Of a stretch of 64,000 nt of DNA, positions 10,081 to 54,665 are shown one piece after another. The stretch is taken from positions 23,312,001 to 23,376,000 of the forward strand of contig OZ249444.1 in NCBI GenBank assembly GCA_965235115.1, read 5' to 3'. Numbering within the stretch: position 1 is the first letter of the stretch; each line of letters opens with the position of its first letter. The DNA is from Laetmonice hystrix (taxonomy: Eukaryota). The position numbers were made by a program, and so were the translations under genes. The notes under the pieces are model-generated. The model worked only from the letters and a program-made list of their open reading frames with translations, was not told the DNA's origin and ran no database searches.

Positions 10081-10407
10081 CAGACTCCCTCGGGTGTTGG
10101 GAAGGTTGTAACCCAATGTGAATAGCATTGTTCAGACTGAGGTTTGGCAGACTCCCGGGTGTTGGGAAGGTTGTAACCCAATGTGAATAGTATTGTTCAG
10201 ACTGAGGTTTGGCAGACTCCCGGGTGTTGGGAAGGTTGTAATCCAGTGTGAATAGCATTGTTCAGACTGAGGTTTGGCAGACTCCCGGGTGTTGGGAAGG
10301 TTGTAACCCAATGTGAATAGTATTGTTCAGACTGAGGTTTGGCAGACTCCCGGGTGTTGGGAAGGTTGTAACCCAGTGTGAATAGCATTGTTCAGACTGA
10401 GGTTTGG
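10081..10407. repeat. 65-bp tandem repeat x5
   Basis: Unit cagactcccgggtgttgggaaggttgtaacccaatgtgaatagcattgttcagactgaggtttgg at 10081, 10148, 10213, 10278 and 10343. Confidence 0.95.
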
Positions 10408-10563
10408 CTGGGGGGTTGTTACACATCCCTGTGTGTACACACAGGTCCCGTGAACTCAAGATAAGGGCACTGTATACACACACCTCGATCTGTGCTGTAG
10501 ACTGTAACCATCGCCCACTTGGACAGGGTTCGGCGGACCCCTCGCCCTCCCCCACGTACCTAT

Positions 10564-11668
10564 AGGTCTGTGGGTGATGGGCGTTAAACACCAACTACTT
10601 ACTCACTATAGTCATTCACTCAGGTCTGTGGGTGACTGGGCGTTAAACACCAACTACTCACTCACGAGTCATTCACTCAGGGTCTGTGGGTGACTGGGCG
10701 TTAAACACCAACTACTCACTCACGAGTCATTCACTCAGGTCTGTGGGTGACTGGGCGTTAAACACCAACTACTCACTCACTATAGTCATTCACTCAGGTC
10801 TGTGGGTGACTGGGCGTTAAACACCAACTACTCACTCACTAGTCATTCACTCAGGTCTGTGGGTGACTGGGCGTTAAACACCAACTACTCACTCACGAGT
10901 CATTCACTCAGGGTCTGTGGGTGACTGGGCGTTAAACACCAACTACTCACTCATGAGTCATTCACTCAGGTCTGTGGGTGACTGGGCGTTAAACACCAAC
11001 TACTCACTCACTAGTAATTCACTCAGGTCTGTGGGTGACTGGGCGTTAAACACCAACTACTCACTCACTATAGTCATTCACTCAGGTCTGTGGGTGACTG
11101 GGCGTTAAACACCAACTACTCACTCACTAGTCATTCACTCAGGTCTGTGGGTGACTGGGCGTTAAACACCAACTACTCACTCACGAGTCATTCACTCAGG
11201 GTCTGTGGGTGACTGGGCGTTAAACACCAACTACTCACTCATGAGTCATTCACTCAGGTCTGTGGGTGACTGGGCGTTAAACACCAACTACTCACTCACT
11301 AGTCATTCACTCAGGTCTGTGGGTGACTGGGCGTTAAACACCAACTACTCACTCACGAGTCATTCACTCAGGTCTGTGGGTGACTGGGCGTTAAACACCA
11401 ACTACTCACTCACTAGTAATTCACTCAGGTCTGTGGGTGACTGGGCGTTAAACACCAACTACTCACTCACGAGTCATTCACTCAGGTCTGTGGGTGACTG
11501 GGCGTTAAACACCAACTACTCACTCACGAGTCATTCACTCAGGTCTGTGGATGACTGGGCGTTAAACACCAACTACTCACTCATGAGTCATTCACTCAGG
11601 TCTGTGGGTGACTGGGCGTTAAACACCAACTACTCACTCACGAGTCATTCACTCAGGTCTGTGGGTGA
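10564..11668. repeat. ~57-bp tandem repeat x~19
   Basis: Unit aggtctgtgggtgactgggcgttaaacaccaactactcactcacgagtcattcactc. Variation is confined to a few positions in the (actc)n part. Confidence 0.97.
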
Positions 11669-11705
11669 TTCTCTCGTGCTAGCATTCCAACCAGTTTGTG
11701 GGTCT

Positions 11706-11867
11706 GGGTTACGGTAAGGGGCAGGGTTACGGTTAGGGGCAGGGTTACGGTTAGGGGCAGGGTTACGGTAAGGGGCAGGGTTACGGTTAGGGACAGGGTT
11801 ACGGTTAGGGACAGGGTTATGGTAAGGGGCAGGGTGACGGTTAGGGACAGGGTTATGGTAAGGGGCG
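11706..11867. repeat. 18-bp G-rich tandem repeat x9 containing TTAGGG/TAAGGG
   Basis: Unit gggttacggttaggggca with minor variants. G-run spacing is compatible with G-quadruplex formation. Confidence 0.9.
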
Positions 11868-11882
11868 GGTCTCTAGAATACT

Positions 11883-11960
11883 ACTGCCCTGAGGACGCCC
11901 ACTGCCCTGTGGACGCCCACTGCCCTGAGGACGCCCACTGCCCTGTGGACGCCCACTGCC
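11883..11960. repeat. 18-bp tandem repeat x4 (actgccctgWggacgccc)
   Basis: Direct reading; gag and gtg variants alternate. Confidence 0.9.
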
Positions 11961-12485
11961 ACCAGGGAGCCGTCTCTCCCGTGCTCACTCAGAGAGCTGA
12001 GCTGGCGTCTCTCACCTGAATGCCCCCCCCCCCCGACCCCTCACGCCGCCGAGAGTGAGTGCCGCCAAGACGCAGTGACAGTCTTCAACCAGAGACCGGT
12101 GACCGTCCACGTCCCCACTCCTACACACATGGCAGCCTCTTCAATCGGAGCGGGTTAATTACCTGGTACGCCCACAAAAACGGATATGGTTCTCTTAGGA
12201 TGTGTCACGGCACGCTCTAGGATCTGTTTAATAATACCTGGCTCGAGCTCAGAGCTGGAGTCTGTGTCCACACTGGTGTATTGGCACCAGTGGTGAGACA
12301 CCATGATGATATAACAAAGGCAGAGATGATCCTAGGATTAACGTTTACTCGGCAAATCTTCATCATTGTTTATTGTTCTGTCACCCACGGCTTTGATCAG
12401 GACTGACTATAGATATCATCAGATGGACGGCACTGCCTGAGTTTAGAGTTGTCCCACGGGTGCGATCCAACAGGGTAACAACATA

Positions 12486-12803
12486 TGTTATGTTGGGGTA
12501 GCTGTTCGGTTGAAGACTTGAAGACGCGTTGTTGGGATTCCAATATACTTTATTGTGGTGAGGATTTCCTCTCCACTCTGGACACTCTTCTCTACAATAC
12601 TGCCGATTCCCCTTGCGTCTCCTACTATATAGGCCCTTCTCTCGGGCATGCAGGTGCGCGTCTATAGGGCCATAAAGGTATAACTCTTTTGTAACCGTGG
12701 GGGCAATTACGCTAACTCATGTATATGTAATCCCTTAATGGGAGTGACCAACAATAAGGTTGTAAAACTGTATGTGTGGGCAAGGTGAAACCTGACCATA
12801 ACA
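12486..12803 (-). repeat. 3' LTR (318 bp)
   Basis: No differences from 14999-15316 found by eye. On the - strand a TATA-like element (12626-12631) precedes AATAAA (12549-12554), as expected for U3-R-U5. Confidence 0.95.
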
Positions 12804-12812
12804 TTACCCCCC
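12804..12812 (-). other. Polypurine tract of the LTR element
   Basis: The - strand reads ...cggggggtaa immediately before the 3' LTR TGTTATG. Confidence 0.75.
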
Positions 12813-13587
12813 GACACGATAAAAAGTGGCAGTCCCTTGCCACAGATAGGCCGATAAACGTGTATAAAAAGTTTTACACAACCTTGGCTTCTATAGAACT
12901 TTCACTTGGGTAAACCTGCCATAGATTTGTAAAATAATTATATGTTACACTGGATGTACATATTGCTTATCGCATTGCTCGACACATTAAATCATCAAAG
13001 TCCATGTCAACTTAAAAATACATACATAAAAGTGACAGTGTGATAACATACTAAAATATACACGAAGGACAAATATACGCACTTATACTTCACAACAATC
13101 TCGCAGGTGTATCAACGAGTTAGACAAAAGCTTTCTGGTTATCCAAAATTTGGTTCTTACACAGTTGATTAGGGACTTCCCCAAAGTTATCGCATGGCTT
13201 GTAAGTTGTCTGTAAACAACGACACTGTCACGATAACCTACTGATATGTGTATGCATCCTTTGATGCGAGTAATTACAAAAACTGTGAAAATAATATGAG
13301 ACTTACAAACCTTACTTATATGTGCAAATGCGGCTATGTGAATTAACCAAATATCCAAATGTTACAAAGCTTTAGAGGCTAGAAAAAGTATAGGGGGGAA
13401 AACCCAATATACCTAAGGTAATATGCATGAAAGCAGCAAGCAGTTAACTGATACAATGATACGCAACAATGAAATAATGTCATACTCAGTATCACTAAAG
13501 CTATATAATTTTCGCAACAGAAATATAGATTTTATACACCTCAAAAGTACCAAAATTGAGAATTCATAAAATTGACTTAATGTACTG

Positions 13588-14937
13588 TTAATGGTAATAA
13601 CCATAAGGTGATGAAAAATGTGTAGGATGGCTGTACATAGGTTGTGGTACATATGGTCCATACACAGGTTGTGGACATGTTGGGTATGGTCCAGTATCGT
13701 ATTCTTCATAAGAGTCCTCACCGTGGGAATCATAATCTTCCGTGCTGTGATCGAAGTCACAATCACAGAAGAAAACGTTGTGGTGATCGTGAAGAACCAT
13801 GGTCACCTTAAGTTCCTCCTCGAATATAAAAGGTGGTAAGGTCCCAAGAGGAACTTTGTCCATAAGACGATAATGACAACCATTGAATTTAACCAGGAAT
13901 GTTGATTGGATGTCGCTGTTTTCACAATACCTTTGTGATATACCTTCTGACAAGAATTTCCGCTGCTGCCTTAAAATCGGTTTGAGCTTAATGTCTCTTG
14001 TAAAAACTTTGGTCCCAAAAGAAATATGGATTGGTAGAACAGCAGTCGAAGAAAAGTTATTTGGAAGTATATCATTGAGAAATGGAATGTCACATAATCG
14101 TGAGTGCTGGAAAAAGTCATTTGTGAAAAATGGATCTGCAAAGTCTGTAGAAAAAGCTGTTTGGGTTGCACTCTCACGGCTGACACATAAAACATTGTGC
14201 TGCCCAAGAGCTACCTTCATACTGTCAATCTCTTTGTCTTTTAGAGCCAGGTCGTTGGTTAGACGGGTGATTGTTTTAAGGGATTCCTCTAACTGCAGCT
14301 TTAGTTTAACGATGTCCGTGTTCTGTTTGATGGCTGTGTCGGCGAGTATCTTGATGTTTGCCTTGAATTTAGAAAAGTCATCTTGCCCTTTGTTGACGAA
14401 TTGAGCACAATTATTACGTAGTGCGACAGCTTCATGTCTCAGGGAAGAGACAGTTCCCTGAATTTTTATCAGATCTTTAGTTGTATCTCGCTGTGGTTCC
14501 GTTTGACTGGATGTTTCTGTCATATGTAAGATGGTTTGGGCCTGAGAATGAACATATAGAACTGGCTTTGGTGGAGAATATTGAGATACCTGAAGGTGTT
14601 CTTTCGGTGCTTTGGTGTACAGGTAACGTTGTAGAGTTTCACTGTCCAGGTCGGCAAATGGTAGCATCATCATGACTGACTTTCTGCGAAGGAATTCCTC
14701 CATACGACGCTTGTCACGAGCACGCTGTGTTTTTGGCTTAAAGGTGACTTGCCTTTCATGGGTGGTGAACGACCTGGCAAAACACATCCGTCCAAAGTGT
14801 CCATCACGACCACACTTGGCGCACTGCTGGTTGTAGGCTGGACAGAAGTGGCGGCTTAAACAAGGAAAGCCACATCTGTAGCATCTGCGCTGGACGTGCT
14901 GGTTCATATTGTTGAATCTTGTCCTCTGGTGTTCCAT
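13588..14937 (-). CDS. 449-aa ORF of the LTR element: N-terminal Gag-type double zinc knuckle, coiled coil, unknown C-terminal domain
   Basis: CYRCGFPCLSRHFCPAYNQQCAKCGRDGHFGRMC contains a canonical CX2CX4HX4C preceded by a degenerate knuckle, the pattern typical of Gypsy Gag nucleocapsid. Heptad-rich central region. Uninterrupted ORF lying between PBS and PPT. Confidence 0.9.
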   Translation of the reverse strand: MEHQRTRFNNMNQHVQRRCYRCGFPCLSRHFCPAYNQQCAKCGRDGHFGRMCFARSFTTHERQVTFKPKTQRARDKRRMEEFLRRKSVMMMLPFADLDSETLQRYLYTKAPKEHLQVSQYSPPKPVLYVHSQAQTILHMTETSSQTEPQRDTTKDLIKIQGTVSSLRHEAVALRNNCAQFVNKGQDDFSKFKANIKILADTAIKQNTDIVKLKLQLEESLKTITRLTNDLALKDKEIDSMKVALGQHNVLCVSRESATQTAFSTDFADPFFTNDFFQHSRLCDIPFLNDILPNNFSSTAVLPIHISFGTKVFTRDIKLKPILRQQRKFLSEGISQRYCENSDIQSTFLVKFNGCHYRLMDKVPLGTLPPFIFEEELKVTMVLHDHHNVFFCDCDFDHSTEDYDSHGEDSYEEYDTGPYPTCPQPVYGPYVPQPMYSHPTHFSSPYGYYH

Positions 14938-14979
14938 GTCTTCAGGTACGGGAAAGCGTGTAAAGGTGAAATTTACACC

Positions 14980-14997
14980 ATCCGGGTTCTATCACCA
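14980..14997 (-). other. Primer binding site (TGGTGATAGAACCCGGAT)
   Basis: Starts with TGG (complement of tRNA CCA) 1 nt after the 5' LTR. The priming tRNA was not identified. Confidence 0.8.
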
Positions 14998-14998
14998 G

Positions 14999-15316
14999 TG
15001 TTATGTTGGGGTAGCTGTTCGGTTGAAGACTTGAAGACGCGTTGTTGGGATTCCAATATACTTTATTGTGGTGAGGATTTCCTCTCCACTCTGGACACTC
15101 TTCTCTACAATACTGCCGATTCCCCTTGCGTCTCCTACTATATAGGCCCTTCTCTCGGGCATGCAGGTGCGCGTCTATAGGGCCATAAAGGTATAACTCT
15201 TTTGTAACCGTGGGGGCAATTACGCTAACTCATGTATATGTAATCCCTTAATGGGAGTGACCAACAATAAGGTTGTAAAACTGTATGTGTGGGCAAGGTG
15301 AAACCTGACCATAACA
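14999..15316 (-). repeat. 5' LTR (318 bp)
   Basis: Apparently identical to 12486-12803; followed on the - strand by the PBS. Confidence 0.95.
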
Positions 15317-15824
15317 CATATAACCCCCTTACTGCGGGTGTTAACGGTACAATCACCGTGATAAGTGAGGGTGACGTGTGTTGGGGTGATCACACGTGCC
15401 CCACCCCCCGGTATTGATTGGACGTGGAGCGTTGCCTGAGGACGGCTGGTGTCAGCGGCTGGACGCTGGTGGTGGAGGAATGCTGGCGGCACCAACGTGG
15501 ACGAGCTCCAGTCGATGGCAGCCTGGGGAATAGTGGTTATTGACGGGAACTTGTAGGTCAGCGACATGCTGGTAGTCTACACGTGCAGCCAGTGGTAGTG
15601 AACTAAGACTGCTGCTTCATGTTAGGACTGCCAGCAGCCTGCAGAGGTTATGTGTTGGTAATAATGGCTCATGGAACCCAAACTGGAACAAAACGGAAAG
15701 CTTTCAACTCGGATGGCATGCGTCACGCAACTTTACATCATGACATTTGCTTTAGTTTGTTGGATACCTGAAACCGATTATAAGACCGACGATTTAAAAC
15801 TTGTGTGAAACAACCGGATTTGCA

Positions 15825-16157: not shown

Positions 16158-16474
16158 GTAGGCTGGTCATTTTCTCTTCCAAACTCAGAACGAATCCCGT
16201 CAGGTTTCTAAAGAGTCTGTTTAGGTACCGTGTTTATTGACACTCTACTGGCCCTTTGGGGATGTAGCATTTCCATTTCAACGGAATCTTATTACTTCAG
16301 GGGGAAAAGCTTTGGCATTTGGGGGAAAGTGGTTAAAACCTGGCTAATTGTACCCACGGCCGAGGAGTTATAATTAGGGAATTTAGGGCAATAGGATGGA
16401 TACCATCCCTGGCCATTGATCTGTTACAGCCTCGGGAGTTTTAAAACACGTGCATGAGATTCTACACACGTCAA

Positions 16475-16689
16475 TATCACCTGTCACGTCTCTCCCATTG
16501 TGTATACGGTCAATGAAACGCTTGAACGTGAAACATTCTGATGACCTAACCTAGGACTATGTACCCTGAAACTTAAGGCTATATCACCTGTCACGTCTCT
16601 CCCACTGTGTATACGGTCAATGAAACGGTTGAACGTGAAACATTCTGATGACCTAACCTAGGACTCTGTACCCTGAAACCTAAGGCTAT
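16475..16689. repeat. 107-bp tandem duplication
   Basis: tatcacctgtcacgtctctccc... at 16475 and 16582. Confidence 0.9.
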
Positions 16690-19129
16690 AGGTATTACCC
16701 CATGTGCTCACTATTTATTCGCCATGCAAGACATCTGTTTGCCTGTCTCAGTATTTGCAAGACGTCTTCCCTTATCTGGAGCAACAACTAGGTTATAAAA
16801 GTTCCTTCAGAATTTACACAGTATGTTTGGCCTGAGGGGATAGCCGTCTGTATATGGTGTATTATAGCACTGGTGCCAGGACATTGCCTACAGTACCCCC
16901 TGAGGTATATTCAGTCCATGACATGGCCCAGAGATGTCTTAATCACATTCAGACCCTCAATGTTATGTCAGATTTCATCATAAGATATGTATGCATTGAG
17001 GTCAAGATTTCACCATCGTGACAATCGGACCAGTAGAGCACTCAGGTGTGATCGTCTGGCAACTTAATTAAAGTTGGGAATTATCTCTCAAACCATAGAT
17101 CTTCGATCTACGTCCTCGTAGGAAAGAGATCTGAGTACTGTTTCTAATTGCCTCTATAGGCTATAGAGCTCTGCATGTCATCTGTCTTGATAAATTCAAC
17201 AATTCTGCTGCTAAGTACTGTCGTGTAACAATGTTATTCAAGTATATTTCCACATAACATAGCTATTTATGACGAATCTGATTACAGCAAGTAATTAGGA
17301 TACTCGTATTAATTGTGATATTAATTAAGATGTCTCATTATTGACAAACATTGTTATTAAATGTCAACTGATCATAGATTTTTCTCCGGTTTGCCTGACG
17401 TATACAAACTGAGGACTTTAGCTTTAATCATACATTATAGATGGGGAGCTAAGCCTGATCAATTAACCTCGTAAAAGCTTTAACAGTCCAGTAGTGTTGT
17501 AGATTACCCACTGTAATAGACAGCGTTTACCTGTCGCCACACAAGACTGTTACTATAGCAATGTCTCTCTGTTTATTTTGGTGTGTTTTGTAAGAAAGAT
17601 TGAACCGACACGCCTCCGGAGTGAAGCAATTGTTTGGCGTTCCGGCGCATTGCTTAGCAACCAGGATAATAGCGTTCCTTTGCCCTCAGTGTGGCTACTT
17701 GGTACATTGGATTTTTGTGTGCTTATAGAAATAAACATTCTACTGAAGAATTTCCATTGATTGTTAGGAGAAAATCAAAGGGAATGCCCAGGAAAACAAA
17801 CAGAAACTGTCAAACGTTCGCGGTGCTGCTTACCGCATAACAGTTCAGGAAATAGCACTGATTCAGCTTAGCAAGAAAAGGACAGTTCGAGATGTACTTT
17901 AAGATCAAATTGCCTTAGAGTAACGTTACATGAGTAGTCTTGGAGGTTTAGGTTACATGGGGAGATACTCTGACAGTTTGTATGAGTCTATGTCCTGGTA
18001 TACTACCTCAGCAGTGGTATACCCTGGTACTGAGCGTTAGGCTACTGTTACATGCCCGACCTGTACCAAACCACAAACCTTGAGTCTACCTCAGCAGTAC
18101 CACTACTACCTCAGCACTACCTCAGTGATATACCCTGGTACTGAGCGTTAGGTTACATGCCCGACCTTTACCAAACCACAAACCTTGAGAATTGAGACTG
18201 TATGCTGTAGATATATGTAGAGTCGAGAGTCGACTAGAAAAGATAAGTCTGCATGAACTTGTTGGCGGGAAAGTTGGTGGTAGGATATCAGATATCAGTA
18301 GGTGTGGTTATATCTTGGATAACTCTCGGGAATAGTAAACCGATTAGGGTTATAGAGATAAAGTGTTCTTTCGTTAAGAACTTAGGTCTTCAAGATTTTC
18401 TAGTGACATTATCTGTTTACATCAATGATATCGTGTATATTGTGTGCCTCAGATACCCGTACATAGCCAGATCTAACGGCCGGTAGGGTTGGTTTCTCTC
18501 GTACCCGCTTGTTTACCTGTCCCAGTCGATTAACCGTTAAAACTGATGATCACACAATGTAGAAACATCTCGGGAGATTATCTGATAATCCGACCTGGAG
18601 TGATCCATTTACTGCCACTGTTATCTGCTGAGTGCATGCTGATGGTGACAATGAGACTGGAGACAGCTGTTCAAAGCCTGTTCGTCCTACAGCTTCAGGC
18701 TACGTTGGTAGGTGGAGAATGGAGACAACTGAAGCCCACAGCTTCAGGCTGACAGGATTTTTTGTCCACAAGCATCTTGATCGTTCTGTCAGAACATTGT
18801 GTTTCTAACCATACATTTTGTCGCATGTAATTTATATCTCAAGGTAGAAACTGTGAAATCATGTGGACGTCCTTGTCAGAAATAATGGGCCGTGTACAGA
18901 AAACTTTTCTGTGGAGGATGATATCCTTCACATTTTCATTATTTGTTGATTTATTTGATTTCTTTATATTTGTCATAAAGCTTTTATCAGTTAGCTCTAC
19001 AGCTAGCAAACGGATCTTTCTCGATCTCCGTCTGTCTAGGATATAATGGACATTGAAAAAAAATATATTCAAGTATTATATAAATGTCATACGACCGGCA
19101 GATGAGAACCGTGTACATGTGACCTTTCT

Positions 19130-20503
19130 GAAACATCATTATGTGATCATGCAGTATACGTGTAGACTGATTGAAACATCATTATGTGATCATGCAGTAT
19201 ACGTGTAGACTGATTGAAACATCATTATGTGATCATGCAGTATACGTGCAGACTGATTGAAACATCATTATGTGATCATGCAGTATACGTGCAGACTGAT
19301 GGAAACATCATTATGTGATCATGCAGTATACGTGCAGACTGATTGAAACATTATGTGATCATGCAGTATACGTGCAGACTGATTGAAACATCATTATGTG
19401 ATCATGCAGTATACGTGCAGACTGATTGAAACATTATGTGATCATGCAGTATACGTGCAGACTGATGGAAACATCATTATGTGATCATGCAGTATACGTG
19501 TAGACTGATTGAAACATCATTATGTGATCATGCAGTATACGTGTAGACTGATGGAAACATCATTATGTGATCATGCAGTATACGTGCAGACTGATTGAAA
19601 CATCATTATGTGATCATGCAGTATACGTGCAGACTGATGGAAACATCATTATGTGAGCATGCAGTATACGTGCAGACTGATTGAAACATCATTATGTGAT
19701 CATGCAGTATACGTGTAGACTGATTGAAACATCATTATGTGATCATGCAGTATACGTGCAGACTGATTGAAACATCATTATGTGATCATGCAGTATACGT
19801 GCAGACTGATTGAAACATCATTATGGGATCATGCAGTATACGTGCAGACTGATTGAAACATCATTATGGGATCATGCAGTATACGTGTAGACTGATTGAA
19901 ACATCATTATGTGATCATGCAGTATACGTGCAGACTGATTGAAACATCATTATGTGATCATGCAGTATACGTGCAGACTGATTGAAACATCATTATGTGA
20001 TCATGCCGTATACGTGTAGACTGATTGAAACATCATTATGTGATCATGCAGTATACGTGCAGACTGATTGAAACATCATTATGTGATCATGCAGTATACG
20101 TGCAGACTGATTGAAACATCATTATGGGATCATGCAGTATACGTGTAGACTGATTGAAACATCATTATGTGATCATGCAGTATACGTGCAGACTGATTGA
20201 AACATCATTATGTGATCATGCAGTATACGTGCAGACTGATGGAAACATCATTATGTGATCATGCAGTATACGTGCAGACTGATTGAAACATCATTATGTG
20301 ATCATGCAGGATACGTGTAGACTGATGGAAACATCATTATGTGATCATGCAGTATACGTGTAGACTGATTGAAACATCATTATGTGATCATGCAGTATAC
20401 GTGCAGACTGATTGAAACATCATTATGTGATCATGCAGTATACGTGCAGACTGATTGAAACATCATTATGTGATCATGCAGTATACGTGCAGACTGATTG
20501 AAA
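19130..20503. repeat. 43-bp satellite x~32
   Basis: Unit gaaacatcattatgtgatcatgcagtatacgtgcagactgatt, highly homogeneous. Confidence 0.98.
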
Positions 20504-20603
20504 AGTAGCTACTTTAGTTACAGTCCTGTCCGGCCTACTCTGTCTGTCTTGATATTTCTGATAAACATCGGAAGTTATTGTCTTGGTAACATACAAGTCT
20601 CTT

Positions 20604-22154
20604 ATCTTACATATTATGTAGAGAGTAGAGATTGCGTTACTCGGAGTGGACACACGTGTGTGCCAGCATGATCTTACATATTATGTAGAGAGTAGAGATT
20701 GCGTTACTCGGAGTGGACACACGTGTGTGCCAGCATGATCTTACATATTATGTAGAGTAGAGATTGCGTTACTCGGAGTGGACACACGTGTGTGCCAGCA
20801 TGATCTTACATATGTAGAGAGTAGAGATTGCGTTACTCGGAGTGGACACACGTGTGTGCCAGCATGATCTTACATATTATGTAGAGTAGAGATTGCGTTA
20901 CTCGGAGTGGACACACGTGTGTGCCAGCATGATCTTACATATTATGTAGAGAGTAGAGATTGCGTTACTCGGAGTGGACACACGTGTGTGCCAGCATGAT
21001 CTTACATATGTAGAGAGTAGAGATTGCGTTACTCGGAGTGGACACACGTGTGTGCCAGCATGATCTTACATATTATGTAGAGTAGAGATTGCGTTACTCG
21101 GAGTGGACACACGTGTGTGCCAGCATGATCTTACATATTATGTAGAGAGTAGAGATTGCGTTACTCGGAGTGGACACACGTGTGTGCCAGCATGATCTTA
21201 CATATGTAGAGAGTAGAGATTGCGTTACTCGGAGTGGACACACGTGTGTGCCAGCATGATCTTACATATGTAGAGAGTAGAGATTGCGTTACTCGGAGTG
21301 GACACACGTGTGTGCCAGCATGATCTTACATATTATGTAGAGTAGAGATTGCGTTACTCGGAGTGGACACACGTGTGTGCCAGCATGATCTTATATATTA
21401 TGTAGAGTAGAGATTGCGTTACTCGGAGTGGACACACGTGTGTGCCAGCATGATCTTACATAATGTAGAGAGTAGAGATTGCGTTACTCGGAGTGGACAC
21501 ACGTGTGTGCCAGCCTGATCTTACATATGTAGAGAGTAGAGATTGCGTTACTCGGAGTGGACACACGTGTGTGCCAGCATGATCTTACATATGTAGAGAG
21601 TAGAGATTGCGTTACTCGGAGTGGACACACGTGTGTGCCAGCATGATCTTACATATGTAGAGAGTAGAGATTGCGTTACTCGGAGTGGACACACGTGTGT
21701 GCCAGCATGATCTTACATATTATGTAGAGAGTAGAGATTGCGTTACTCGGAGTGGACACACGTGTGTGCCAGCACGATCTTACATATTATGTAGAGAGTA
21801 GAGATTGCGTTACTCGGAGTGGACACACGTGTGTGCCAGCATGATCTTACATATGTAGAGAATAGAGATTGCGTTACTCGGAGTGGACCCACGTGTGTGC
21901 CAGCATGATCTTACATATGTAGAGAGTAGAGATTGCGTTACTCGGAGTGGACACACGTGTGTGCCAGCATGATCTTACATATTATGTAGAGAGTAGAGAT
22001 TGCGTTACTCGGAGTGGACACACGTGTGTGCCAGCATGATCTTACATATTATGTAGAGAGTAGAGATTGCGTTACTCGGAGTGGACACACGTGTGTGCCA
22101 GCATGATCTTACATATTATGTAGAGAGTAGAGATTGTGTTACTCGGAGTGGACA
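20604..22154. repeat. 64-67-bp satellite x~23 with internal palindromes
   Basis: Unit atcttacatattatgtagagagtagagattgcgttactcggagtggacacacgtgtgtgccagcatg. Confidence 0.98.
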
Positions 22155-22465
22155 TTATGGGTTCGGTTTTAGGAGGTTGATGTTCATGGATCCGGCCACA
22201 ACAAACTCGCTGTCATTATCATACTGTGTTTAACACTCGTCCTGGGTACATAGGCGGGAAACTTTGGTGCCCGAAACTTGACGAAGAAAAGAAAAATGTT
22301 TATTTGTAAAGAATACTGGCTCGTGTATTCATCATATTTGAAGGGGATTCTCAGTCGGGTAATTCTTGCAGCTGAGATATTTTCAGTATTGAAGGTCATA
22401 TACCAGGCTCAAACATGCTGCACCCATCCGGCTGTGGTTTTGTCGTGTAAACTGAGACAGGATAG

Positions 22466-23712
22466 ATGGGCTTTACTGGCCTCTACATATCGTACAGTTA
22501 CAGGGGTATGAACAATAACTACAGGAGTAGAAACTTCATCCATCCAGGCAGGGCGACATCATCATGTACAACATGGGCTTTACTGGCCTCTACATATCGT
22601 ACAGTTACAGGGGTATGAACAATAACTACAGGAGTAGAAACTTCATCCATCCAGGCAGGGCGACATCATCATGTACATCATGGGCTTTACTGGCCTCTAC
22701 ATATCGTACAGTTACAGGGGTATGAACAATAACTACAGGAGTAGAAACTTCATCCATCCAGGCAGGGCGACATCATCATGTACATCATGGGCTTTACTGG
22801 CCTCTACATATCGTACAGTTACAGGGGTATGAACAATAACTACAGGAGTAGAAACTTCATCCATCCAGGCAGGGCGACATCATCATGTACAACATGGGCT
22901 TTACTGGCCTCTACATATCGTACAGTTACAGGGGTATGAACAATAACTACAGGAGTAGAAACTTCATCCATCCAGGCAGGGCGACATCATCATGTACATC
23001 ATGGGCTTTACTGGTCTCTACATATCGTACAGTTACAGGGGTATGAACAATAACTACAGGAGTAGAAACCTCATCCATCCAGGCAGGGCGACATCATCAT
23101 GTACATCATGGGCTTTACTGGCCTCTACATATCGTACAGTTACAGGGGTATGAACAATAACTACAGGAGTAGAAACCTCATCCATCCAGGCAGGGCGACA
23201 TCATCATGTACAACATGGGCTTTACTGGCCTCTACATATCGTACAGTTACAGGGGTATGAACAATAACTACAGGAGTAGAAACTTCATTCATCCAGGCAG
23301 GGCGACATCATCATGTACATCATGGGCTTTACTGGCCTCTACATATCGTACAGTTACAGGGGTATGAACAATAACTACAGGAGTAGAAACTTCATCCATC
23401 CAGGCAGGGCGACATCATCATGTACATCATGGGCTTTACTGGTCTCTACATATCGTACAGTTACAGGGGTATGAACAATAACTACAGGAGTAGAAACTTC
23501 ATCCAGGCAGGGCGACATCATCATGTACATCATGGGCTTTACATATCGTACAGTTACAGGGGTATGAACAATAACTACAGGAGTAGAAACTTCATCCATC
23601 CAGGCAGGGCGACATCATCATGTACATCATGGGCTTTACTGGCCTCTACATATCGTACAGTTACAGGGGTATGAACAATAACTACAGGAGTAGAAACTTC
23701 ATCCATCCAGGG
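22466..23712. repeat. 107-bp satellite x~11.6
   Basis: Unit begins atgggctttactggcctctacatatcgtac at 22466, 22573 and onward. Confidence 0.98.
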
Positions 23713-25509: not shown

Positions 25510-25820
25510 GTCAGTTATTGTAACCTACTCCTCTATACTCCTCCTCTATACTCCTCTTCCTCCTCTACTCCTGCTTCCTCCTCTTCCTCCCCCGTCTCCT
25601 CCTCGTCCCAACCTCTCACTCAAAGTCTTTGGTCACAGGGATGTCTTCAACAAGGCCATGACTGCCAGCAAACACCTCATCGTTGAGGTTGGATTATGGT
25701 GGAAATAGTTCCTTCTGTAATATTCATAGTTTTAGTATAATAATGTTCAAAAATAGAATGGGACAACATAATTATAAATCTTCTTGCATGCGATTATCTT
25801 GTGTCAAAAGTAGAATTTTG

Positions 25821-26112
25821 ATGACAAATAATCTTGCTTACCGATCGAAGGTCATGAATATACTGGAACGTAAGACGTTTACGGTTCTAACCTGGGTAGT
25901 ATGTACCGGGGAGAGTATTTGGGTTACTTCAGTATGTCGGCATGGATATGGAGATATATCCACATGATGACAAATAACCTTGCTTACCGATCGAATATCA
26001 TGAATATGGTGGTACGTAAGACGTTTACAGTTCTAACCTGGGTAGTATGTACCGGGGAGAGTATTTGGGTTACTTCAGTATGACGGCATGGATATGGAGA
26101 TATATCCACATG
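25821..26112. repeat. 146-bp tandem duplication
   Basis: atgacaaataa... at 25821 and 25967 with few substitutions. Confidence 0.9.
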
Positions 26113-28856
26113 AATTCATAGATCATATGGATCCATAGATATTCCCATAAGGCACCTAGGTTGGTTAGTGAGGGCTCAGGGAAGGTTTTCCGGATCAGTG
26201 CACCATGTATTATAGGCTGATGGTGAGAGTACTAATTCGTTATCTAAAGATTATTTGAAGCATGGTGTAAGAAGGACACGATGGGTATGTTGAAGAAATC
26301 CACCAGGTGTCTCTGTTCAGTCAGGTGTAGGTATACAGGTATGAGAAGTTTGAGAACAGTGTTATATATTACCTGTCATACATATAACGTCCTCAGTGTT
26401 TGTGTCTGTCAGTTCGTCCATACAAACGTCGCGCTCGGTGCCAGATCTGTATAACTAGGAGCGATCACTCTAACGGATAATCTTCGCTAAATCACTGTGA
26501 TTGACAAGATAATCTACCATGATTGAGCAGCAAGTCAATGACGTCCTGCCATCGCACTTATCCCCCCCCCCCACCCAGTGAATCAATGTAGAGAGTATTT
26601 TGAGAGACGCAAGAGGATGGCTAGATAGATGGTAATAAAATAGGCTTACATGTAATTGTTAACTATATTGAAAAGTGGTCTCTCGACCGGGGACACACAC
26701 GACATATTGCTGATGCATTTCTTCTATGTGAAACCCAATAGAAAGTGGTCAAAAGATTGGAAGAAGTTTCTTCATCAGTATGTTAGACTCCGTGTTTTAA
26801 TGTAGAGTAAATTATAGTAAACTATGTATACTATCAATGGTCGTAATGAGGTCCTGGTTCAGCTGTATAAAATATCATGATACTTAATAATGATTCTATT
26901 TATGAGTGGTCAATACGTCTGACAACCTTTAGAGATGATGGCGGAGAGCAAGCCATCAGAACGAAAAACTGAAGGTTGTAAACTCTGTTATACTAAACCA
27001 AGCGGTACCTGTAAATTATACGTGTATTATTATATACTGTCGGCCTTCTAAACCAGGCTGTGCTCCAATCGTTGCTTGCTCTATGGTGACCAACATTTAC
27101 TGACGGGGTTTCAAACACACAATCTTCTCAAACCCAGAGCACATATATCCAGTTTGTGAGTGTGTGTGTGTGGAGGGGTTGTTGACCGAGGATTTGTCTG
27201 AGGGTTTCTGACGGGGCAGCACATGAGACGCCGGTCTCGTCTGTGTCATCAAGACATATAGTTCACAGAACCCGATCCGACCCGGAAAGCAGCTGGCACG
27301 ACGCGGTACTCAGCAAAAGGTCAAGACAAAACAGGTCAACTTTTGACTGCCATCATTCTCAGAACCTTAGGACCTACTTTTGTTTATTAAAACTGACATA
27401 TTAAGACGCCCACCCCCTTTTTGATATACATTGTATTGGTAGATCTTTGTTGTTTTCGACTGTTTTCTGGCACGAATAATATCAGAGCAGTAAAAAATTT
27501 GTTGAAAACATGGAAAACATTTGGGAATTCAGGCATTTGGCATTTTTATTTCGTTCAACCCTAAGATGCTATATGTTCATGCTAACTTAGTATGAAGGTT
27601 ACCAAGGATGTCGTGGCCGGAAGCTAGCCAGAACATGTGCTCAGGAAGCTGTCAATATACTCTGCACATAGATTTAACAGAACACAAAAACTGGCCAACG
27701 CAACGGAAGCGGAAGTCCTCTGCTGGAAGCTTGCTGTCAATATTATATTTGGCTGCCTTAGCCATGACAACTGCACTGAACCAGAACAAGAAACTCCACG
27801 CTCATAGCTCCGTTATAGGAAAAATAGAGCCATTGCTTCACGCTTCATGTCATTCTTTGCTATAATTTATAGGTGAAGTCGAAGATGGTGTTGTCAAAGT
27901 AGTATTTTGATTGAATTCAAATTGATATAGGCCTGTCTACGGTATATCCCCCATGATAACCTAAACCCTACGACATTTGGTCAGAAGTAAAGATCCCGAA
28001 CCCTGACCTTATCCTTAACCCCTAACCCCGGTCCCAACACATCCCAAAAACATTATTCCTATCCTATCCCTATCCCTGACCTAAACCCGAACCCCTACCC
28101 AACATTTTGTCTGGAAGTTACCACGGGGTAATAACCCGGTCTGAGATACTCCACCACAAACATCTTTCTGGGTGCCATCGGAGCAGTCCGAGGTCTCACT
28201 GCTGGAGTAGGTAAAGATATGAACGAATCTGGGGGCTGCGGGCAGAGACCGTCACGGCGTAGTGGTGTACGGTCCATACACCAGGGGGCAGTACTAGTCG
28301 GGGATGGTGACATTAAGGGCTGGAGTGAGGCGACAGACAGAATAAAGTGGTAATAACGAAAATGGAACAGTGCCAATTCTCTACTCGTCTCCCCCTGTTC
28401 TGTTGACGCTCGGCAGACAAAAATATGAATTTAAAGGAATGATAGTGCACCTTGAGGGTAGATAGAATGAACAGGTAAAATGTAAGTAATTTTATATTAG
28501 AGAATCCTTTTCCGTCCGTAGGCCTAACTGTGTCACCAGACGTGGGGATTTGTTTGGGCCAGCTGTTTACTGTGGGTGAAATTTTAGTAGTTTTTCTGGA
28601 AACACTACTCTTACACAACTACTATCAGGAATTGGTACATGCCAACAGATTTGTTATTTCTCACAAAGATAAAAATACAGTGGAAACCCGTAACGTAAGT
28701 CAAGTGCTGCCACCTGGCGGAGAGCAAAGGTACCACTGTTGGAAATTGTTTAGAGAAACGTATAAAACCACAGCGATGTTTTGACCCCCCACTGCAAAAC
28801 AAGATAGAACCCATTATAAACAAATAAATATCCTTGAGAAAACCCTTTGGTTAAAC

Positions 28857-31514: not shown

Positions 31515-31931
31515 AATATAAAGAAAGAAGGTGTAAGTGGTTGTTGATCACCAATATAAAGTAAGAAGGAGTAAGTGGTTGTTGATCACCAATATAAAGA
31601 AAGAAGGAGTAAGTGGTTGTTGATCACCAATATAAAGAAAGAAGGAGTAAGTGGTTGTTGATCACCAATATAAAGAAAGAAGGAGTAAGTGGTTGTTGAT
31701 CACCAATAGAAAGTAAGAAGGAGTAAGTGGTTGTTGATCACCAATATAAAGTAAGAAGGAGTAAGTGGTTGTTGATCACCAATATAAAGTAAGAAGGAGT
31801 AAGTGGTTGTTGATCACCAATATAAAGTAAGGAGTAAGTGGTTGTTGATCACCAATATAAAGTAAGAAGGAGTAAGTGGTTGTTGATCACCAATATAAAG
31901 TAAGAAGAAGTAAGTGGTTGTTGATCACCAA
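31515..31931. repeat. 38-bp tandem repeat x~11
   Basis: Unit aatataaagtaagaaggagtaagtggttgttgatcacc. Confidence 0.95.
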
Positions 31932-33114
31932 TGGTAACCGTGGGAACATTCCTGGTTGATCATGTGTCTGTGGTCAGTGCCGATCTGCCGACCGTCACTG
32001 GTTGGATCTCAGTGAACGCAGCTGGTACCGGCACCGCCACCAGGTGTCGTGCAGGTCACGTGACCCAGCCGCAAGGTTCAGAAGCTGACCAGTATTTATG
32101 GGGAGAATGTCAGTCAGGAAAGGTGCGTGACAGGTATGAGCCAAGTGTTTCATTCGTTTGGTGCAAATGTTAACTAAAACAATTACACACTACTGGCACA
32201 TAATCAGATTCCCCCCAAAAGCCTCAGACACAGTACAGGACTAAATAGATTAAGATACCTTGACTCTATACGATGAATCTCTAGCTGAAAAGAAAGAGGT
32301 TAATGTAACATATTGAAGCAACATATTGAAGCTACACAATGCCCAAGAAAAACGCAAACGGAAAATTTCGGAAAGATGCAATTGAGAATGATCACTAAAA
32401 GAAACCAATCGTCGGTATACATACATACAAAGTTGTTTTTGCTGTCGCCTTTATAAGAGTCAGACAGATAGAGGCCAGTAGGTTTTCTTACCGTCTGGCC
32501 TGGACGGTGGTGTCATAGGCGCCACCTCCGAGCAAGGGGGGATTTCTGTAGGCTTATTAAAGGTGGCACCAGCAAATAAGGGAGATTTCTGTAGGCCTCT
32601 TTAGTCTTAGAGGCGCAAAGTGGGGAATTCTACATCGGACAAGGCTCTACAGCTGACCGGAGGCAGGGGAGGGATGTAATGGAATTGGGGGTGGGAGGGG
32701 GGGGATTGGGGCTAATTATAGACGAGGTTGTTGTACCTATAATGATGAAATAAGACACCGGTTTATCGCTGCTCTTGTGAGTGAATACCTTTCGAATCTG
32801 AAGCTAAAGAGATGTCTGACAGAAGGGAGAGAACATTTTTTGGGTAGCGATTTTCTTTCTAATTTTTATTTATTTATTTATTTTTGCACATATTTGAACA
32901 AAGACAACAAAGGATAAACTACAATATAGGGGCATATAGCGATCAAAACAGAATACGAAAAAAGTTTTATCTTGTAGTTAAGTAGGCTGAAGGTGGGCGT
33001 CGGGTCGCGGGGCACATGTATATTTTCTGTGTTTTTGGGGCACGTTGGGAGGGATCGTGTGCACAGGCTCCTCGTGATCCGTGCTTCCACCTGGTGGCAA
33101 ACACACAAACCACA

Positions 33115-33454
33115 GGCAAGGGCTACATCCACCTCCAACCCACATTCAGTAATAGTGATGGGGCAGGGAAGAGCTACATCCACCTCCAACCCACATTCAG
33201 TAATAGTGATGGGGCAGGGAATGGCTACATCCACCTCCAACCCACATTCAGTAATAGTGATGGGGCAGGGAAGGGCTACATCCACCTCCAACCCACATTC
33301 AGTGATAGTGATGGGGCAGGGAAGGGCTACATCCACCTCCAACCCACATTCAGTAATAGTCATGGGGCAGGGAAGGGCTACATCCACCTCCAACCCACAT
33401 TCAGTAGTAGTGATGGGGCAGGGAAGAGCTACATCCACCTCCAACCCACATTCA
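33115..33454. repeat. 51-bp tandem repeat x~6.5
   Basis: Unit gggcagggaagggctacatccacctccaacccacattcagtaatagtgatg. It explains the 17-aa periodic ORFs in the track. Confidence 0.95.
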
Positions 33455-33514
33455 ATCCACATTTCAGGTTTTCATAAAGAATATATCATGTGAAATATTA
33501 TAAGGAGCAAATTG

Positions 33515-33832: not shown

Positions 33833-34928
33833 GAGCAGATCGAAGCCCAGTTTCACCGCGATGGACCGGGGTTAGACTCAGGATACGGCACCGCTAACCA
33901 CTCAGACACCGACTTCCCATGTCACACAACTCTCCACTCCGCAGGTTACCATGGCAATCATCATGACAGCTATAGTTACGGCTATCCCGACGGCTACCAC
34001 ACGCACCCAGCCGTCCGGAACGGGGACTCCACCAGCTACCAACCGCCACCGCCGATAGGTGGCGTGCCGCTTCCGCCGCCGCTGCCACCAGGGGGCAGCA
34101 GCAGCCGAGTGAGCGCGGATAGCGGAGGCAGTATGCCCCACTATCCCGCCCCACCTTTACATGGGAACAGTCGGAGTACATCCAATGGTCAATCTTTGCT
34201 CTCAATGACCCCTCCTCCCCCACCCCCACAGTTCGATATGGGTGCGAATATGACTGTGACAGAGGAGCACTATGAAACACGTCTCCCAACCCCATTGGAC
34301 GACCCTACCCTCATGATGGGGGGTGAGAATATAGATAATATATACGGGGCACAGTTACCCCCACCCGGGATGGACAATGGGTACCCCACTCCTTACGAAC
34401 TCTATGAAACCACTTTGCCAAGACCCCAAGTGGGGCGAGGGCCCCCACAGGCGCCCCCGCCCCCTGGGAGGCGGAGTTCGAACTCGTCAAGCGGTAGCTC
34501 CCACAGAGGGGGTTACAGTAGCTGTGACAATATCATGCCAGGAAGTTATGGCACACCCCATAGAAACTCTATAGAGTCACCTGACTCTGACTTCCCGCCA
34601 CCCCCACCTCCGCAGTTCTTCCCAACCATGCCGGCACCATCCTCCTCCGGCCCCGGGTCACCCGTACGGCCTCCACCCCCGACTCTACCCAAACCTAGGA
34701 AAGGAAGCGTACCAATGAATGGGGGCCCGCCGCCCCCACCCCCGCTATCTACGATACCCAGGGCTTCCTCAGTGGACTACGGCAGCCCCCCGATGCCGCC
34801 GTCCTCCATGACGCTGGGGCCAGGGGGACCTCCACCGCCGCCAGCGCCACCTTTTGGACAGATGTCGGATATTGGAGGACTGGCGGCACAACTCCAGGGC
34901 GTTCAGCTGAGGTCATCTCCCCCAGAAG
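33833..34928 (+). CDS. Large proline-rich exon of an actin-regulatory protein (espin/forked-like candidate), ending in a WH2/G-actin-binding-like motif
   Basis: Acceptor 'ttttgtcgctag' and donor 'gaag|gtaaga'; 1096 nt open (phase 0-1). Encodes EQIEAQF..., SDFPPPPPP (EVH1-ligand-type FPPPP), several poly-Pro runs, PPPTLPKP and GGLAAQLQGVQLR. Confidence 0.9.
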
Positions 34929-53819: not shown

Positions 53820-53959
53820 CCGACAGGACGATAACAGCGACACGTTTAGTGAAACCGGATCAGTGGCGAGTAGCGGATCAAACGACGACTCGAGTTCAGG
53901 ATCGTCTGGCCGACCGGCACCACCCACACTTCCTAAACCCGGCAAGCCAAGCCCAAGTC
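53813..53959 (+). CDS. Internal coding exon (VEIRQDDNSDTFSETGSVASSGSNDDSSSGSSGRPAPPTLPKPGKPSPS)
   Basis: Acceptor 'ttgtttctag' and donor 'gtc|gtgagt'; 147 nt, phase 1-1, compatible with 34928 and 58470. Repeats the PPTLPKP motif seen in the large exon. Confidence 0.8.
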
Positions 53960-54375: not shown

Positions 54376-54665
54376 CGTTGGGGAGCCTTAGGGTTCCCCC
54401 CCCCTTGGCAACCAAGTTTTCTTTTTTACCCCATATGACTTTCTGAATTAACCTTACTGACCCCCTCACTTAGCAAATTCTACCCTTGACCCTCTCCCCA
54501 CCCGCCAGGATTTTACACCGGGGGGGGGGGGTATTGAGTCATTTCCCCCAGAAAATTTGAATTTTTATTTTTAGCAAGTCACCTAAATCCTCTCCCCCCA
54601 CTTCTGGTCTTGATGTTGTCCCCCCCAAAGTGAGGTGTTCATGCCTGTGCCTCAGGTAGAATTAT

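What the first reader, a model, noticed from the sequence alone, without database searches (positions are those of the whole stretch)
12486..15316. Very young LTR retroelement with one intact ORF but no capsid, protease, RT or integrase
Seen: apparently identical 318-bp LTRs, intact TG...CA ends, 4-bp TSD, PBS, PPT and one uninterrupted 449-aa ORF. Only 61 nt separate the 5' LTR from the ATG, and that frame is closed by a TGA inside the PBS. No capsid domain can therefore precede the zinc knuckles, which start at residue 19. Known: Gypsy Gag places the knuckles after the capsid and before Pol, and most non-autonomous LTR elements (TRIM/LARD) are non-coding. Inference: a currently mobile, trans-mobilised satellite retroelement that keeps a nucleocapsid-first protein, possibly to bind its own RNA and enter helper particles.
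Basis: partly seen in the sequence, partly recalled or inferred. Interest (0 to 1): 0.75.

Follow-up and report, generated by a model that had tools for sequence, protein, structure and literature searches.

The report
Young single-gene LTR retroelement without pol
This is a structurally perfect 2.8-kb LTR retroelement that has no copying enzymes of its own and carries a single conserved gene of a previously undescribed type, so it probably spreads by borrowing the machinery of another element.

Summary
Window 12486-15316 is a 2,831-bp LTR retroelement on the minus strand. It has two 318-bp LTRs that are 318/318 identical, TG...CA ends, a 4-bp 'cata' target duplication, a TGG-type primer site, a short G-rich polypurine tract, and a TATA box and AATAAA in the right order. 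It holds one 449-aa ORF.

The ORF has no detectable capsid, protease, RT or integrase. From N to C it reads: two CCHC knuckles (residues 19-52), a basic helix, a confident ~100-residue coiled coil, and a conserved ~135-residue C-terminal domain of unknown, apparently beta-rich fold.

The ORF is not a decaying leftover. Two related lineages (62% and 50% identity), multi-copy in other assemblies, keep the same layout, and the C-terminal domain is the best-conserved part. A search of 1.84 billion representative proteins found nothing else except a larger sister family. That family shares the basic-helix and coiled-coil module but has its knuckles at the usual C-terminal position.

The best reading is a trans-mobilised, non-autonomous element with an atypical Gag substitute. 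Gag-only non-autonomous elements are already known (TR-GAG, BHIKHARI, ENS-1), so this is a new variant, not a new kind.

Helper identity, copy number in this genome, dN/dS and the Gypsy assignment could not be tested.

The parts
12482..12485 (.). Target-site duplication, left copy (cata)
   Evidence: Read directly from the sequence. Identical to 15317-15320.
12486..12803 (-). 3' LTR in element orientation (318 bp). AATAAA lies at 12554-12549 on the minus strand.
   Evidence: 318/318 identical to 14999-15316.
12804..12815 (-). Polypurine-tract-like run (minus strand GTCGGGGGGTAA) abutting the 3' LTR
   Evidence: Script output 'before 3LTR'. Short and G-rich; its function is inferred.
12804..13587 (-). 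784-nt AT-rich non-coding region between the stop codon and the 3' LTR
   Evidence: GC is 29-38%. There are only short ORFs with no Pfam hit to PR, RT or IN. No Rfam family matches.
13588..14937 (-). Single ORF, 449 aa plus stop
   Evidence: Relatives are P0001 (62% identity) and P0002 (50-52%).
14782..14883 (-). Two CCHC zinc knuckles joined by a CPA spacer (residues 19-52)
   Evidence: Pfam zf-CCHC on residues 38-52. Weak matches to retroviral NC chains in the PDB. All Cys/His are kept in P0001, P0003 and P0004.
14593..14769 (-). Basic, conserved helix motif (residues 57-115; RARD..RRMEEF..RKS..LPFADL..LYTKAPKE)
   Evidence: 65-69% identity between lineages. Together with the coiled coil it is homologous to the sister family (hhalign probability 97.6%, E 3e-12).
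14188..14490 (-). Long coiled-coil helix (residues 150-250)
   Evidence: AlphaFold2 gives a single helix, H150-250, with pLDDT 65-92. It is the only confident part of the model.
13750..14154 (-). Conserved C-terminal domain of unknown fold (residues 262-396; HYRLMDKVPLGTLPPF core)
   Evidence: 77% and 59% identity to lineages B and C with no gaps, significantly more conserved than residues 116-261 (the linkers plus the coiled coil) (Fisher p 1e-5 and 2e-3). No Pfam, PDB or Foldseek match. The model is low-confidence and beta-rich.
13591..13749 (-). Acidic, then Pro/Tyr-rich, poorly conserved tail (residues 397-449)
   Evidence: 26-36% identity with indels; net charge -8.
14938..14998 (-). 61-nt leader. 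The PBS-like sequence TGGTGATAGAAC... starts at 14997. In-frame TGA and TAG are present. A 3-codon uORF lies at 14981-14973.
14999..15316 (-). 5' LTR in element orientation. TATATA at 15144-15139 and AATAAA at 15067-15062 (minus strand).
15317..15320 (.). Target-site duplication, right copy (cata)

Best explanation
This is a non-autonomous LTR retroelement that inserted recently and depends on the protease, reverse transcriptase and integrase of another, unidentified LTR element.

It keeps every cis signal needed to be transcribed, primed, reverse-transcribed and integrated: promoter and poly(A) signal in the LTRs, PBS, PPT and TG/CA ends.

It also keeps one gene that is under selection. The protein acts as a Gag substitute without a recognisable capsid. 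The N-terminal CCHC knuckle pair and the adjacent basic helix bind nucleic acid. The ~100-residue coiled coil multimerises the protein. The conserved C-terminal domain provides a family-specific function, most plausibly contact with the helper's particle or with a host factor. The resulting multimeric RNP coats the element's own RNA and gets it into helper particles.

Shown: the anatomy, the absence of pol, conservation of the ORF, the coiled coil, and the sister family.

Inferred: RNA binding, multimerisation state, trans-mobilisation, and the role of the C-terminal domain.
For: - Structure: identical LTRs, TSD, PBS, PPT and an ordered TATA/AATAAA.
- No PR, RT, IN or Gag-CA profile hit in the ORF or in ORF pieces of the 3' region. 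No pol-bearing relative appears among 1.84e9 representative proteins, a search with no length limit.
- Family: lineage B (P0001 cluster, 18 members on many contigs) and lineage C (P0002 cluster, 9 members) include both intact and truncated copies, as expected of a dispersed repeat.
- Constraint: the ORF is intact at 62% and 50% identity, although about 12 and 18 stop-creating substitutions would be expected under neutrality (P about 4e-6 and 2e-8, indels ignored). The C-terminal domain and the basic motif are much more conserved than the linkers.
- The coiled coil is modelled with pLDDT up to 92.
- The knuckle Cys/His are invariant in all members that have the N-terminus.
- The sister family A5 (49 clusters, multi-copy) shares the basic-helix/coiled-coil module (hhalign 97.6%) and a CPA-linked knuckle pair (hhalign E 6.5e-5, probability 64%).
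- Precedents for gag-only, trans-dependent LTR elements: PMC4350172 and PMC12067270.
Against: - No helper element was seen, and the window holds only one copy.
- Copy number and polymorphism in this genome are unknown.
- The fold of the C-terminal domain is unresolved (pLDDT 44).
- Knuckle 1 has non-canonical spacing.
- Most called proteins of lineage C lack the knuckles. Either the knuckles are dispensable or those copies are dead.
- Identical LTRs could also result from gene conversion.
- The tRNA matching the PBS was not identified; no tRNA gene lies in the window.
Confidence: 0.6

Rival explanations
1. The ORF is a complete but unrecognisable Gag. The conserved C-terminal domain, perhaps together with the coiled coil, is the particle-forming module. 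The element then makes its own shell and borrows only Pol. On this reading the claim of 'no capsid' is wrong.
For: The C-terminal domain is the best-conserved part. BHIKHARI Gag also combines a coiled coil with a CA that only structure prediction revealed (PMC12067270). Our models of this domain are too poor to exclude a new assembly fold.
Against: No Gag/CA Pfam profile hits at E up to 10. There is no PDB sequence or Foldseek match. The predicted secondary structure is strand-rich (bb-a-bb-bb), whereas retroviral and Ty3 CA is all-helical (low confidence). The domain is only about 135 residues.
Confidence: 0.15
2. The ORF serves the host, or was captured from the host. The LTR unit is then a carrier or promoter for a gene kept for a cellular role, as proposed for BHIKHARI and ERNI, and not for the element's own spread.
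For: Gag-only ERV families with developmental roles exist (PMC12067270). The ORF is conserved. The C-terminal domain has no TE-typical signature.
Against: All relatives sit in multi-member clusters that include truncated and frameshifted copies, as expected of a repeat family. No single-copy cellular homologue was found in 1.84e9 representatives. The identical LTRs and the TSD indicate a recent insertion, not an old fixed locus.
Confidence: 0.12
3. It is a decaying internal-deletion derivative. The ORF is a chance-surviving fragment of a larger gag-pol, has no function of its own, and evolves neutrally.
For: Many non-autonomous LTR elements arise this way. The 784-nt AT-rich 3' region could be a remnant. 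Lineage C shows many broken copies.
Against: The full-length frame is kept in lineages that are 38-50% diverged (P about 1e-6 or less under neutrality). Conservation is domain-structured. There is no pol remnant in the 3' region. No longer protein contains these domains.
Confidence: 0.07
4. It is not a retroelement. It is a local duplication or assembly artefact that happens to flank a gene.
For: None beyond the bare fact of a direct repeat.
Against: The combination of exact TG...CA ends, a 4-bp TSD, a TGG primer site 1 nt from the LTR, a G-run at the other LTR, and TATA then AATAAA on the ORF's strand is not expected from a duplication. There are no N runs in the window.
Confidence: 0.01

Closest known systems
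TR-GAG elements of plants (Chaparro et al. 2015, PMC4350172)
   Same: Both are short (<4 kb) LTR elements with PBS and PPT. Both carry a single ORF and no pol, and both are presumed to be active through helpers.
   Different: TR-GAG ORFs are recognisable Copia- or Gypsy-type GAG precursors. Here no GAG/CA profile matches, the knuckles are N-terminal, and the protein has a long coiled coil plus a novel domain. The host here does not look like a plant, but this was not established.
BHIKHARI-1/2 of zebrafish and ENS-1/ERNI of chicken (PMC12067270)
   Same: These are animal non-autonomous LTR/ERV families that encode only a Gag-type protein with a coiled coil, have young copies, and keep a conserved ORF.
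   Different: Bik Gag runs coiled coil, then CA, then a glycine-rich patch, and has no knuckles. Here the order is knuckles, basic helix, coiled coil, then an unknown beta-rich domain. No sequence relation was found.
LINE ORF1 proteins (modular: coiled coil plus RRM/CTD or CCHC knuckles; PMC4120745)
   Same: The working logic is the same: a coiled-coil multimer carrying nucleic-acid-binding modules, no capsid, and domain shuffling between related families.
   Different: LINE ORF1 proteins are encoded in non-LTR elements upstream of ORF2. No RRM or Transposase_22 match was found here, and the only PDB L1 ORF1p hit is insignificant (E 0.85).
TRIM and LARD non-autonomous LTR elements
   Same: All have LTRs, PBS and PPT, lack pol, and depend on a helper.
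   Different: TRIM and LARD are defined by a non-coding interior. This element has a conserved 449-aa ORF.
Unnamed sister family found here (alignment A5; P0032 and 48 further clusters)
   Same: It shares a homologous basic-helix and coiled-coil module (hhalign 97.6%), a similar 'ME.Q..R' start, and a CPA-linked CCHC knuckle pair. It is also multi-copy.
   Different: The sister family has four knuckles at the C-terminus and lacks the C-terminal domain. Its genomic context (LTR or LINE) could not be examined.

Membership tests
LTR retrotransposon (structural definition) | Two direct long terminal repeats with TG...CA termini | tested here: met
   318/318 identical; TGTTATG...CATAACA.
LTR retrotransposon (structural definition) | Short target-site duplication flanking the element | tested here: met
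   4-bp 'cata' on both sides.
LTR retrotransposon (structural definition) | tRNA primer-binding site next to the 5' LTR and a polypurine tract next to the 3' LTR | tested here: inconclusive
   TGGTGATAGAAC... starts 1 nt after the LTR, and GGGGGGTAA abuts the 3' LTR. The cognate tRNA was not identified: there is no tRNA gene in the window and no tRNA library was available.
Autonomous LTR retrotransposon | Encodes protease, reverse transcriptase/RNase H and integrase | tested here: not met
   No such Pfam hit in the ORF (E up to 10) or in ORF pieces of the 3' region (E up to 1). The 2.2-kb interior is too short.
Ty3/Gypsy superfamily | RT phylogeny and PR-RT-RH-IN domain order | not testable with these tools
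   There is no pol in the element, and the helper is unknown. A 4-bp TSD is compatible with several superfamilies.
TR-GAG | Under 4 kb, LTRs with PBS and PPT, and exactly one ORF | tested here: met
   2,831 bp with one ORF of 449 aa.
TR-GAG | The ORF is a recognisable Copia- or Gypsy-type GAG precursor | tested here: not met
   Only a marginal zf-CCHC hit. No Retrotrans_gag, UBN2 or other Gag family, and no CA in the PDB searches.
TRIM / LARD | Internal region without coding capacity | tested here: not met
   A conserved 449-aa ORF with relatives.
Gag-only non-autonomous ERV (BHIKHARI / ENS-1 type) | Single gag-type ORF, with no pol and no env | tested here: met
Gag-only non-autonomous ERV (BHIKHARI / ENS-1 type) | Structurally recognisable retroviral CA domain in the protein | tested here: inconclusive
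   AlphaFold2 pLDDT is 44 outside the coiled coil. The C-terminal domain is predicted strand-rich, and Foldseek has no hit with E<0.1 or TM>0.3.
Retroviral-type CCHC zinc knuckle (PF00098) | CX2CX4HX4C motif | tested here: met
   C39, C42, H47, C52. Pfam 20.5 bits against a cut-off of 20.8 on the N-terminal piece, so marginal by score but exact by motif. Knuckle 1 deviates (CX2CX7HX1C).
LINE ORF1p | Encoded upstream of an EN/RT ORF2 in a non-LTR element; coiled coil plus RRM/CTD or knuckles | tested here: not met
   The context is an LTR element. A coiled coil and knuckles are present, but there is no RRM or Transposase_22 hit.
Retrozyme | Hammerhead ribozyme in the repeats and a non-coding interior | tested here: not met
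   No Rfam ribozyme at the gathering threshold in the window or at E<=1 in the element.

The most novel reading that the evidence does not exclude
An LTR-retroelement lineage has given up the capsid-based Gag altogether. It uses an ORF1p-like strategy instead: a knuckle-first, coiled-coil RNP protein with a new C-terminal adaptor domain that docks its RNA into, or hijacks, the particles of an unrelated helper. This protein and its sister family with C-terminal knuckles would then be a previously unrecognised, modular class of retroelement RNA chaperones that shuffles domains between element types.
Probability: 0.2. Interest if true: 0.7.

Novelty: new variant of a known kind. Interest (0 to 1): 0.45.

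Why it matters
Non-autonomous LTR elements are usually treated as non-coding parasites (TRIM, LARD) or as carriers of an ordinary Gag (TR-GAG, BHIKHARI). This element keeps a gene under selection, but the gene shows no recognisable capsid and has its nucleic-acid-binding knuckles at the opposite end from normal.

If the protein really drives packaging into foreign particles, it gives a compact, apparently active system for asking which part of Gag function a satellite must supply itself and which part it can steal.

The conserved C-terminal domain and the sister family are unannotated protein families, so there is no existing name for TE annotation pipelines to give them.

Tried and rejected
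1. Pfam on the whole ORF, on the N- and C-terminal pieces, and on every ORF piece of 25 aa or more in the 3' region gave only a marginal zf-CCHC hit and coiled-coil noise. PHROGs gave nothing.
2. PDB sequence searches with the protein and with the family profile gave only weak NC-knuckle and coiled-coil hits.
3. AlphaFold2 was run on the full length and on the C-terminal domain with the family alignment. Both gave pLDDT 44, and only the coiled coil was confident. Foldseek against the PDB on the domain model gave nothing usable. The scattered beta-grasp-like hits at E>0.1 were disregarded.
4. A retropepsin in the C-terminal domain was rejected: there is no D[TS]G motif and no protease profile hit.
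5. A retrozyme or other structured RNA was rejected.
As a result I have no DNA of relatives, no dN/dS, no LTR check of relatives, and no genomic context for the sister family.
7. A McDonald-Kreitman-like contrast at the protein level (within-lineage against between-lineage changes, C-terminal domain against the rest) had too few polymorphisms and showed no signal.
8. Source organism: Pfam on seven other window ORFs gave nothing, so the organism was not identified. GC is 44.7% and CpG o/e 0.65.
9. The third word-index protein search was not spent. The library-wide HMM search has no length limit and already covers fusions and fragments. However, its profile left out the first ~50 residues, which include the knuckles.
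The consensus lines printed automatically by the alignment tools were not used.
Full report
**Observation**

The two repeats at 12486-12803 and 14999-15316 are identical at all 318 positions, and identity stops exactly at their borders (confirmed by blastn and by script). They are the only dispersed repeat pair in the 64-kb window. Everything else that repeats is tandem.

- The only long ORF lies on the minus strand (14937..13588, 449 aa), so the element reads right to left.
- In that orientation the LTR begins TGTTATGG and ends CCAACATAACA.
- The four bases 'cata' flank both ends (12482-12485 and 15317-15320).
- The LTR carries TATATA at position 173 and AATAAA at position 250, the order expected for U3-R-U5.
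- The 5' LTR is followed after one base by TGGTGATAGAAC....
- The 3' LTR is preceded by GTCGGGGGGTAA.
- The leader is 61 nt long. In the ORF's frame it starts TGG TGA TAG, so nothing can be translated upstream of the ATG.

With zero differences in 318 bp, the 95% upper bound on divergence between the two LTRs is about 0.9% (3/318). 'Very young' is fair, but it cannot be turned into years without the host's mutation rate.

**What the element lacks**

The interior is 2,195 bp: the leader, the ORF, and 784 nt of AT-rich sequence (GC 29-38%).

- Pfam finds no protease, reverse transcriptase, RNase H, integrase or Gag/capsid family in the ORF at E up to 10.
- It also finds none in any ORF piece of the 3' region at E up to 1.
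- No Rfam family, including hammerhead ribozymes, is present.

The element cannot copy itself. If it moves, it does so with the enzymes of another element. That step is an inference from established retroelement biology, not something observed here.

**The protein**

| Residues | Feature | Evidence |
|---|---|---|
| 19-52 | Two knuckles joined by a Cys-Pro-Ala spacer. The first is non-canonical (CX2CX7HX1C), the second canonical (CX2CX4HX4C). | Pfam zf-CCHC, E 5e-4, just under the gathering score. Weak similarity to retroviral nucleocapsid chains. |
| 57-115 | Basic, strongly conserved, predicted helical | |
| 150-250 | One uninterrupted helix | pLDDT 65-92, the only confident part of the AlphaFold2 model |
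| 262-396 | Most conserved block; no match in Pfam, the PDB by sequence, or the PDB by fold | |
| 397-449 | Acidic, then Pro/Tyr-rich, poorly conserved tail | |

The two models of residues 262-396 have pLDDT about 44. They suggest a strand-rich bb-a-bb-bb arrangement. That is unlike the all-helical retroviral or Ty3 capsid, but the models are too weak to be decisive. The domain has no D[TS]G motif, so it is not a retropepsin.

**Relatives**

The word-index search found four clusters, and cluster listing added their members. I call the window copy lineage A.

- Lineage B (P0001 cluster) has 18 members on many different contigs and is 62% identical to the window protein over its full length. It has the same domain order, including the N-terminal knuckles.
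- Lineage C (P0002 cluster) has 9 members and is about 50% identical.
- Both clusters mix full-length, truncated, frameshifted and stop-loss copies. This is the signature of a dispersed repeat family.
- The members may come from more than one assembly or haplotype, so the exact number of loci is uncertain.

A profile search of 1.84 billion representative proteins, with no length limit, returned only fragments of this family, two low-complexity matches, and one weak hit, P0032. There is therefore no gag-pol polyprotein, cellular gene or viral protein with these domains in that library. One caveat applies: the first ~50 residues, which hold the knuckles, were not part of the profile. The window's own protein is not in the collection.

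**Sister family**

P0032 belongs to a larger, equally unannotated, multi-copy family of 49 clusters (alignment A5).

- Profile-profile comparison shows homology to window residues 57-213, the basic helix plus coiled coil, with 97.6% probability (E 3e-12).
- The sister proteins start with a similar 'ME.Q..R' N-terminus.
- They carry four CCHC knuckles at the C-terminus and lack the C-terminal domain.
- Their first knuckle pair has the same CPA spacer and aligns to the window family's N-terminal pair (hhalign E 6.5e-5, probability 64%; BLASTP E about 1e-3).

The simplest reading is domain shuffling within one superfamily of retroelement proteins. The window family moved or re-acquired the knuckle pair at the N-terminus and gained a new C-terminal domain. 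Such modularity is documented for LINE ORF1 proteins (PMC4120745). Whether the sister family sits in LTR or non-LTR elements could not be determined.

**Is the ORF under selection?**

DNA of the relatives could not be fetched, so dN/dS was not computed. Two indirect tests were possible.

1. From the codon content of the window ORF, 4.3% of random substitutions create a stop. Reaching 38% or 50% amino-acid divergence neutrally would entail about 12 or 18 stop-creating hits. The chance of an open frame is then about 4e-6 or 2e-8, even ignoring indels.
2. Conservation is domain-structured. The C-terminal domain is 77% and 59% identical to lineages B and C, with no gaps. Residues 116-261 (the two linkers plus the coiled coil) are 40-51% identical overall, and the linkers alone 27-47% (Fisher p 1e-5 and 2e-3).

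Both results argue against a neutrally decaying deletion remnant. A protein-level McDonald-Kreitman-like contrast had too few within-lineage differences to say anything.

**Mechanism proposed (confidence 0.6)**

I read this as a satellite LTR retroelement. Its transcript, running from the 5' LTR TATA to the 3' LTR poly(A) signal, encodes a multimeric nucleic-acid-binding protein. The knuckles and basic helix bind RNA and the coiled coil assembles the protein. This protein marks the element's own RNA. The conserved C-terminal domain couples the RNP to a helper's particle or to a host factor. The helper's RT and IN then produce the observed TG...CA ends and 4-bp duplication.

The main rivals are these:
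- The C-terminal domain is itself a new assembly or capsid module, so only Pol is borrowed (0.15).
- The gene is kept for, or was captured from, the host, as proposed for BHIKHARI and ERNI (PMC12067270) (0.12).
- The ORF is a neutral deletion remnant (0.07).
- The repeat pair is an artefact (0.01).

**Comparison with known systems**

The element meets the structural definition of an LTR retrotransposon, except that the tRNA matching the PBS was not identified.

- It is not a TRIM or LARD, because it codes for a protein.
- It is not a retrozyme.
- It fits the TR-GAG format (PMC4350172) but fails TR-GAG's defining feature, a recognisable Copia- or Gypsy-type GAG.
- It resembles the animal gag-only families BHIKHARI-1/2 and ENS-1 (PMC12067270) in lifestyle and in having a coiled coil. 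There is no sequence relation, and no CA could be shown.
- Functionally its protein looks more like a LINE ORF1p (coiled coil plus nucleic-acid-binding modules, no capsid), but it is not a member of that family.

**Verdict**

It is a new variant of a known kind, a coding non-autonomous LTR element, and not a new category. The parts that would make it exciting remain inferences: a truly capsid-less protein, packaging into a foreign particle, and current mobility. Interest 0.45.

**Limits**

- The source organism was not identified.
A mobilisation assay with an altered copy is listed as a referred step.

Noticed in passing
window 10081-11972, 16474-16690, 19129-23711, 25819-26113, 31515-31932, 33113-33454, 37485-38212, 42844-43580, 53911-55101, 58585-59105: The window holds at least 14 separate minisatellite arrays, with units of 18 to 146 bp, up to 32 copies, and mostly 94-97% matches. 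The element sits about 500 bp from one cluster of arrays. The arrays create long spurious ORFs such as 11205-11717 and 32878-33462.
   Followed up: partly
window 34064-34939 (+): A 291-aa open frame that is very rich in proline (PPPPP runs). It is probably an exon of a host gene. Pfam gave no hit.
   Followed up: partly
window 14492-14509 (-), residues 143-148 of the ORF; protein P0031: The motif SSQTEP is invariant in all lineages of the family. It lies in an S/T-Q-rich linker just before the coiled coil. It recurs as a roughly nine-fold tandem repeat (..ETSSQTEPD.KTISTQTEMN..) in an otherwise unrelated 330-aa protein, P0031. It may be a short linear motif, for example a phosphorylation site, but this is unexplained.
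   Followed up: no
proteins P0002, P0019-P0026 versus P0003, P0004 (lineage C): All called lineage C proteins with an intact C-terminal domain start at or just before the Met inside knuckle 2, so they lack the knuckles. The lineage C copies that keep the knuckles are frameshifted before the C-terminal domain. Either the lineage is dead, or a knuckle-less form is functional.
   Followed up: partly
proteins P0012, P0014 (lineage B): These are two 504-aa members that have lost the stop codon and read 70 residues into the 3' region. The extension has no recognisable domain.
   Followed up: no
window 14973-14981 (-): A three-codon upstream ORF (ATG GTG TAA) lies inside the PBS/leader, 44 nt before the main ATG.
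   Followed up: no
window 15357-15381 and 16464-16488: A 25-nt imperfect inverted repeat (80% complementary) lies 1.1 kb apart, just outside the element's right flank. It may mark the ends of an older DNA transposon into or next to which the element inserted.
   Followed up: no
alignment A5 (P0032-P0065), residues about 17-30 of P0032: The sister family has a nearly invariant hydrophobic N-terminal motif (VLPVV.YLTLP) that is absent from the window family. Its function is unknown.
   Followed up: no
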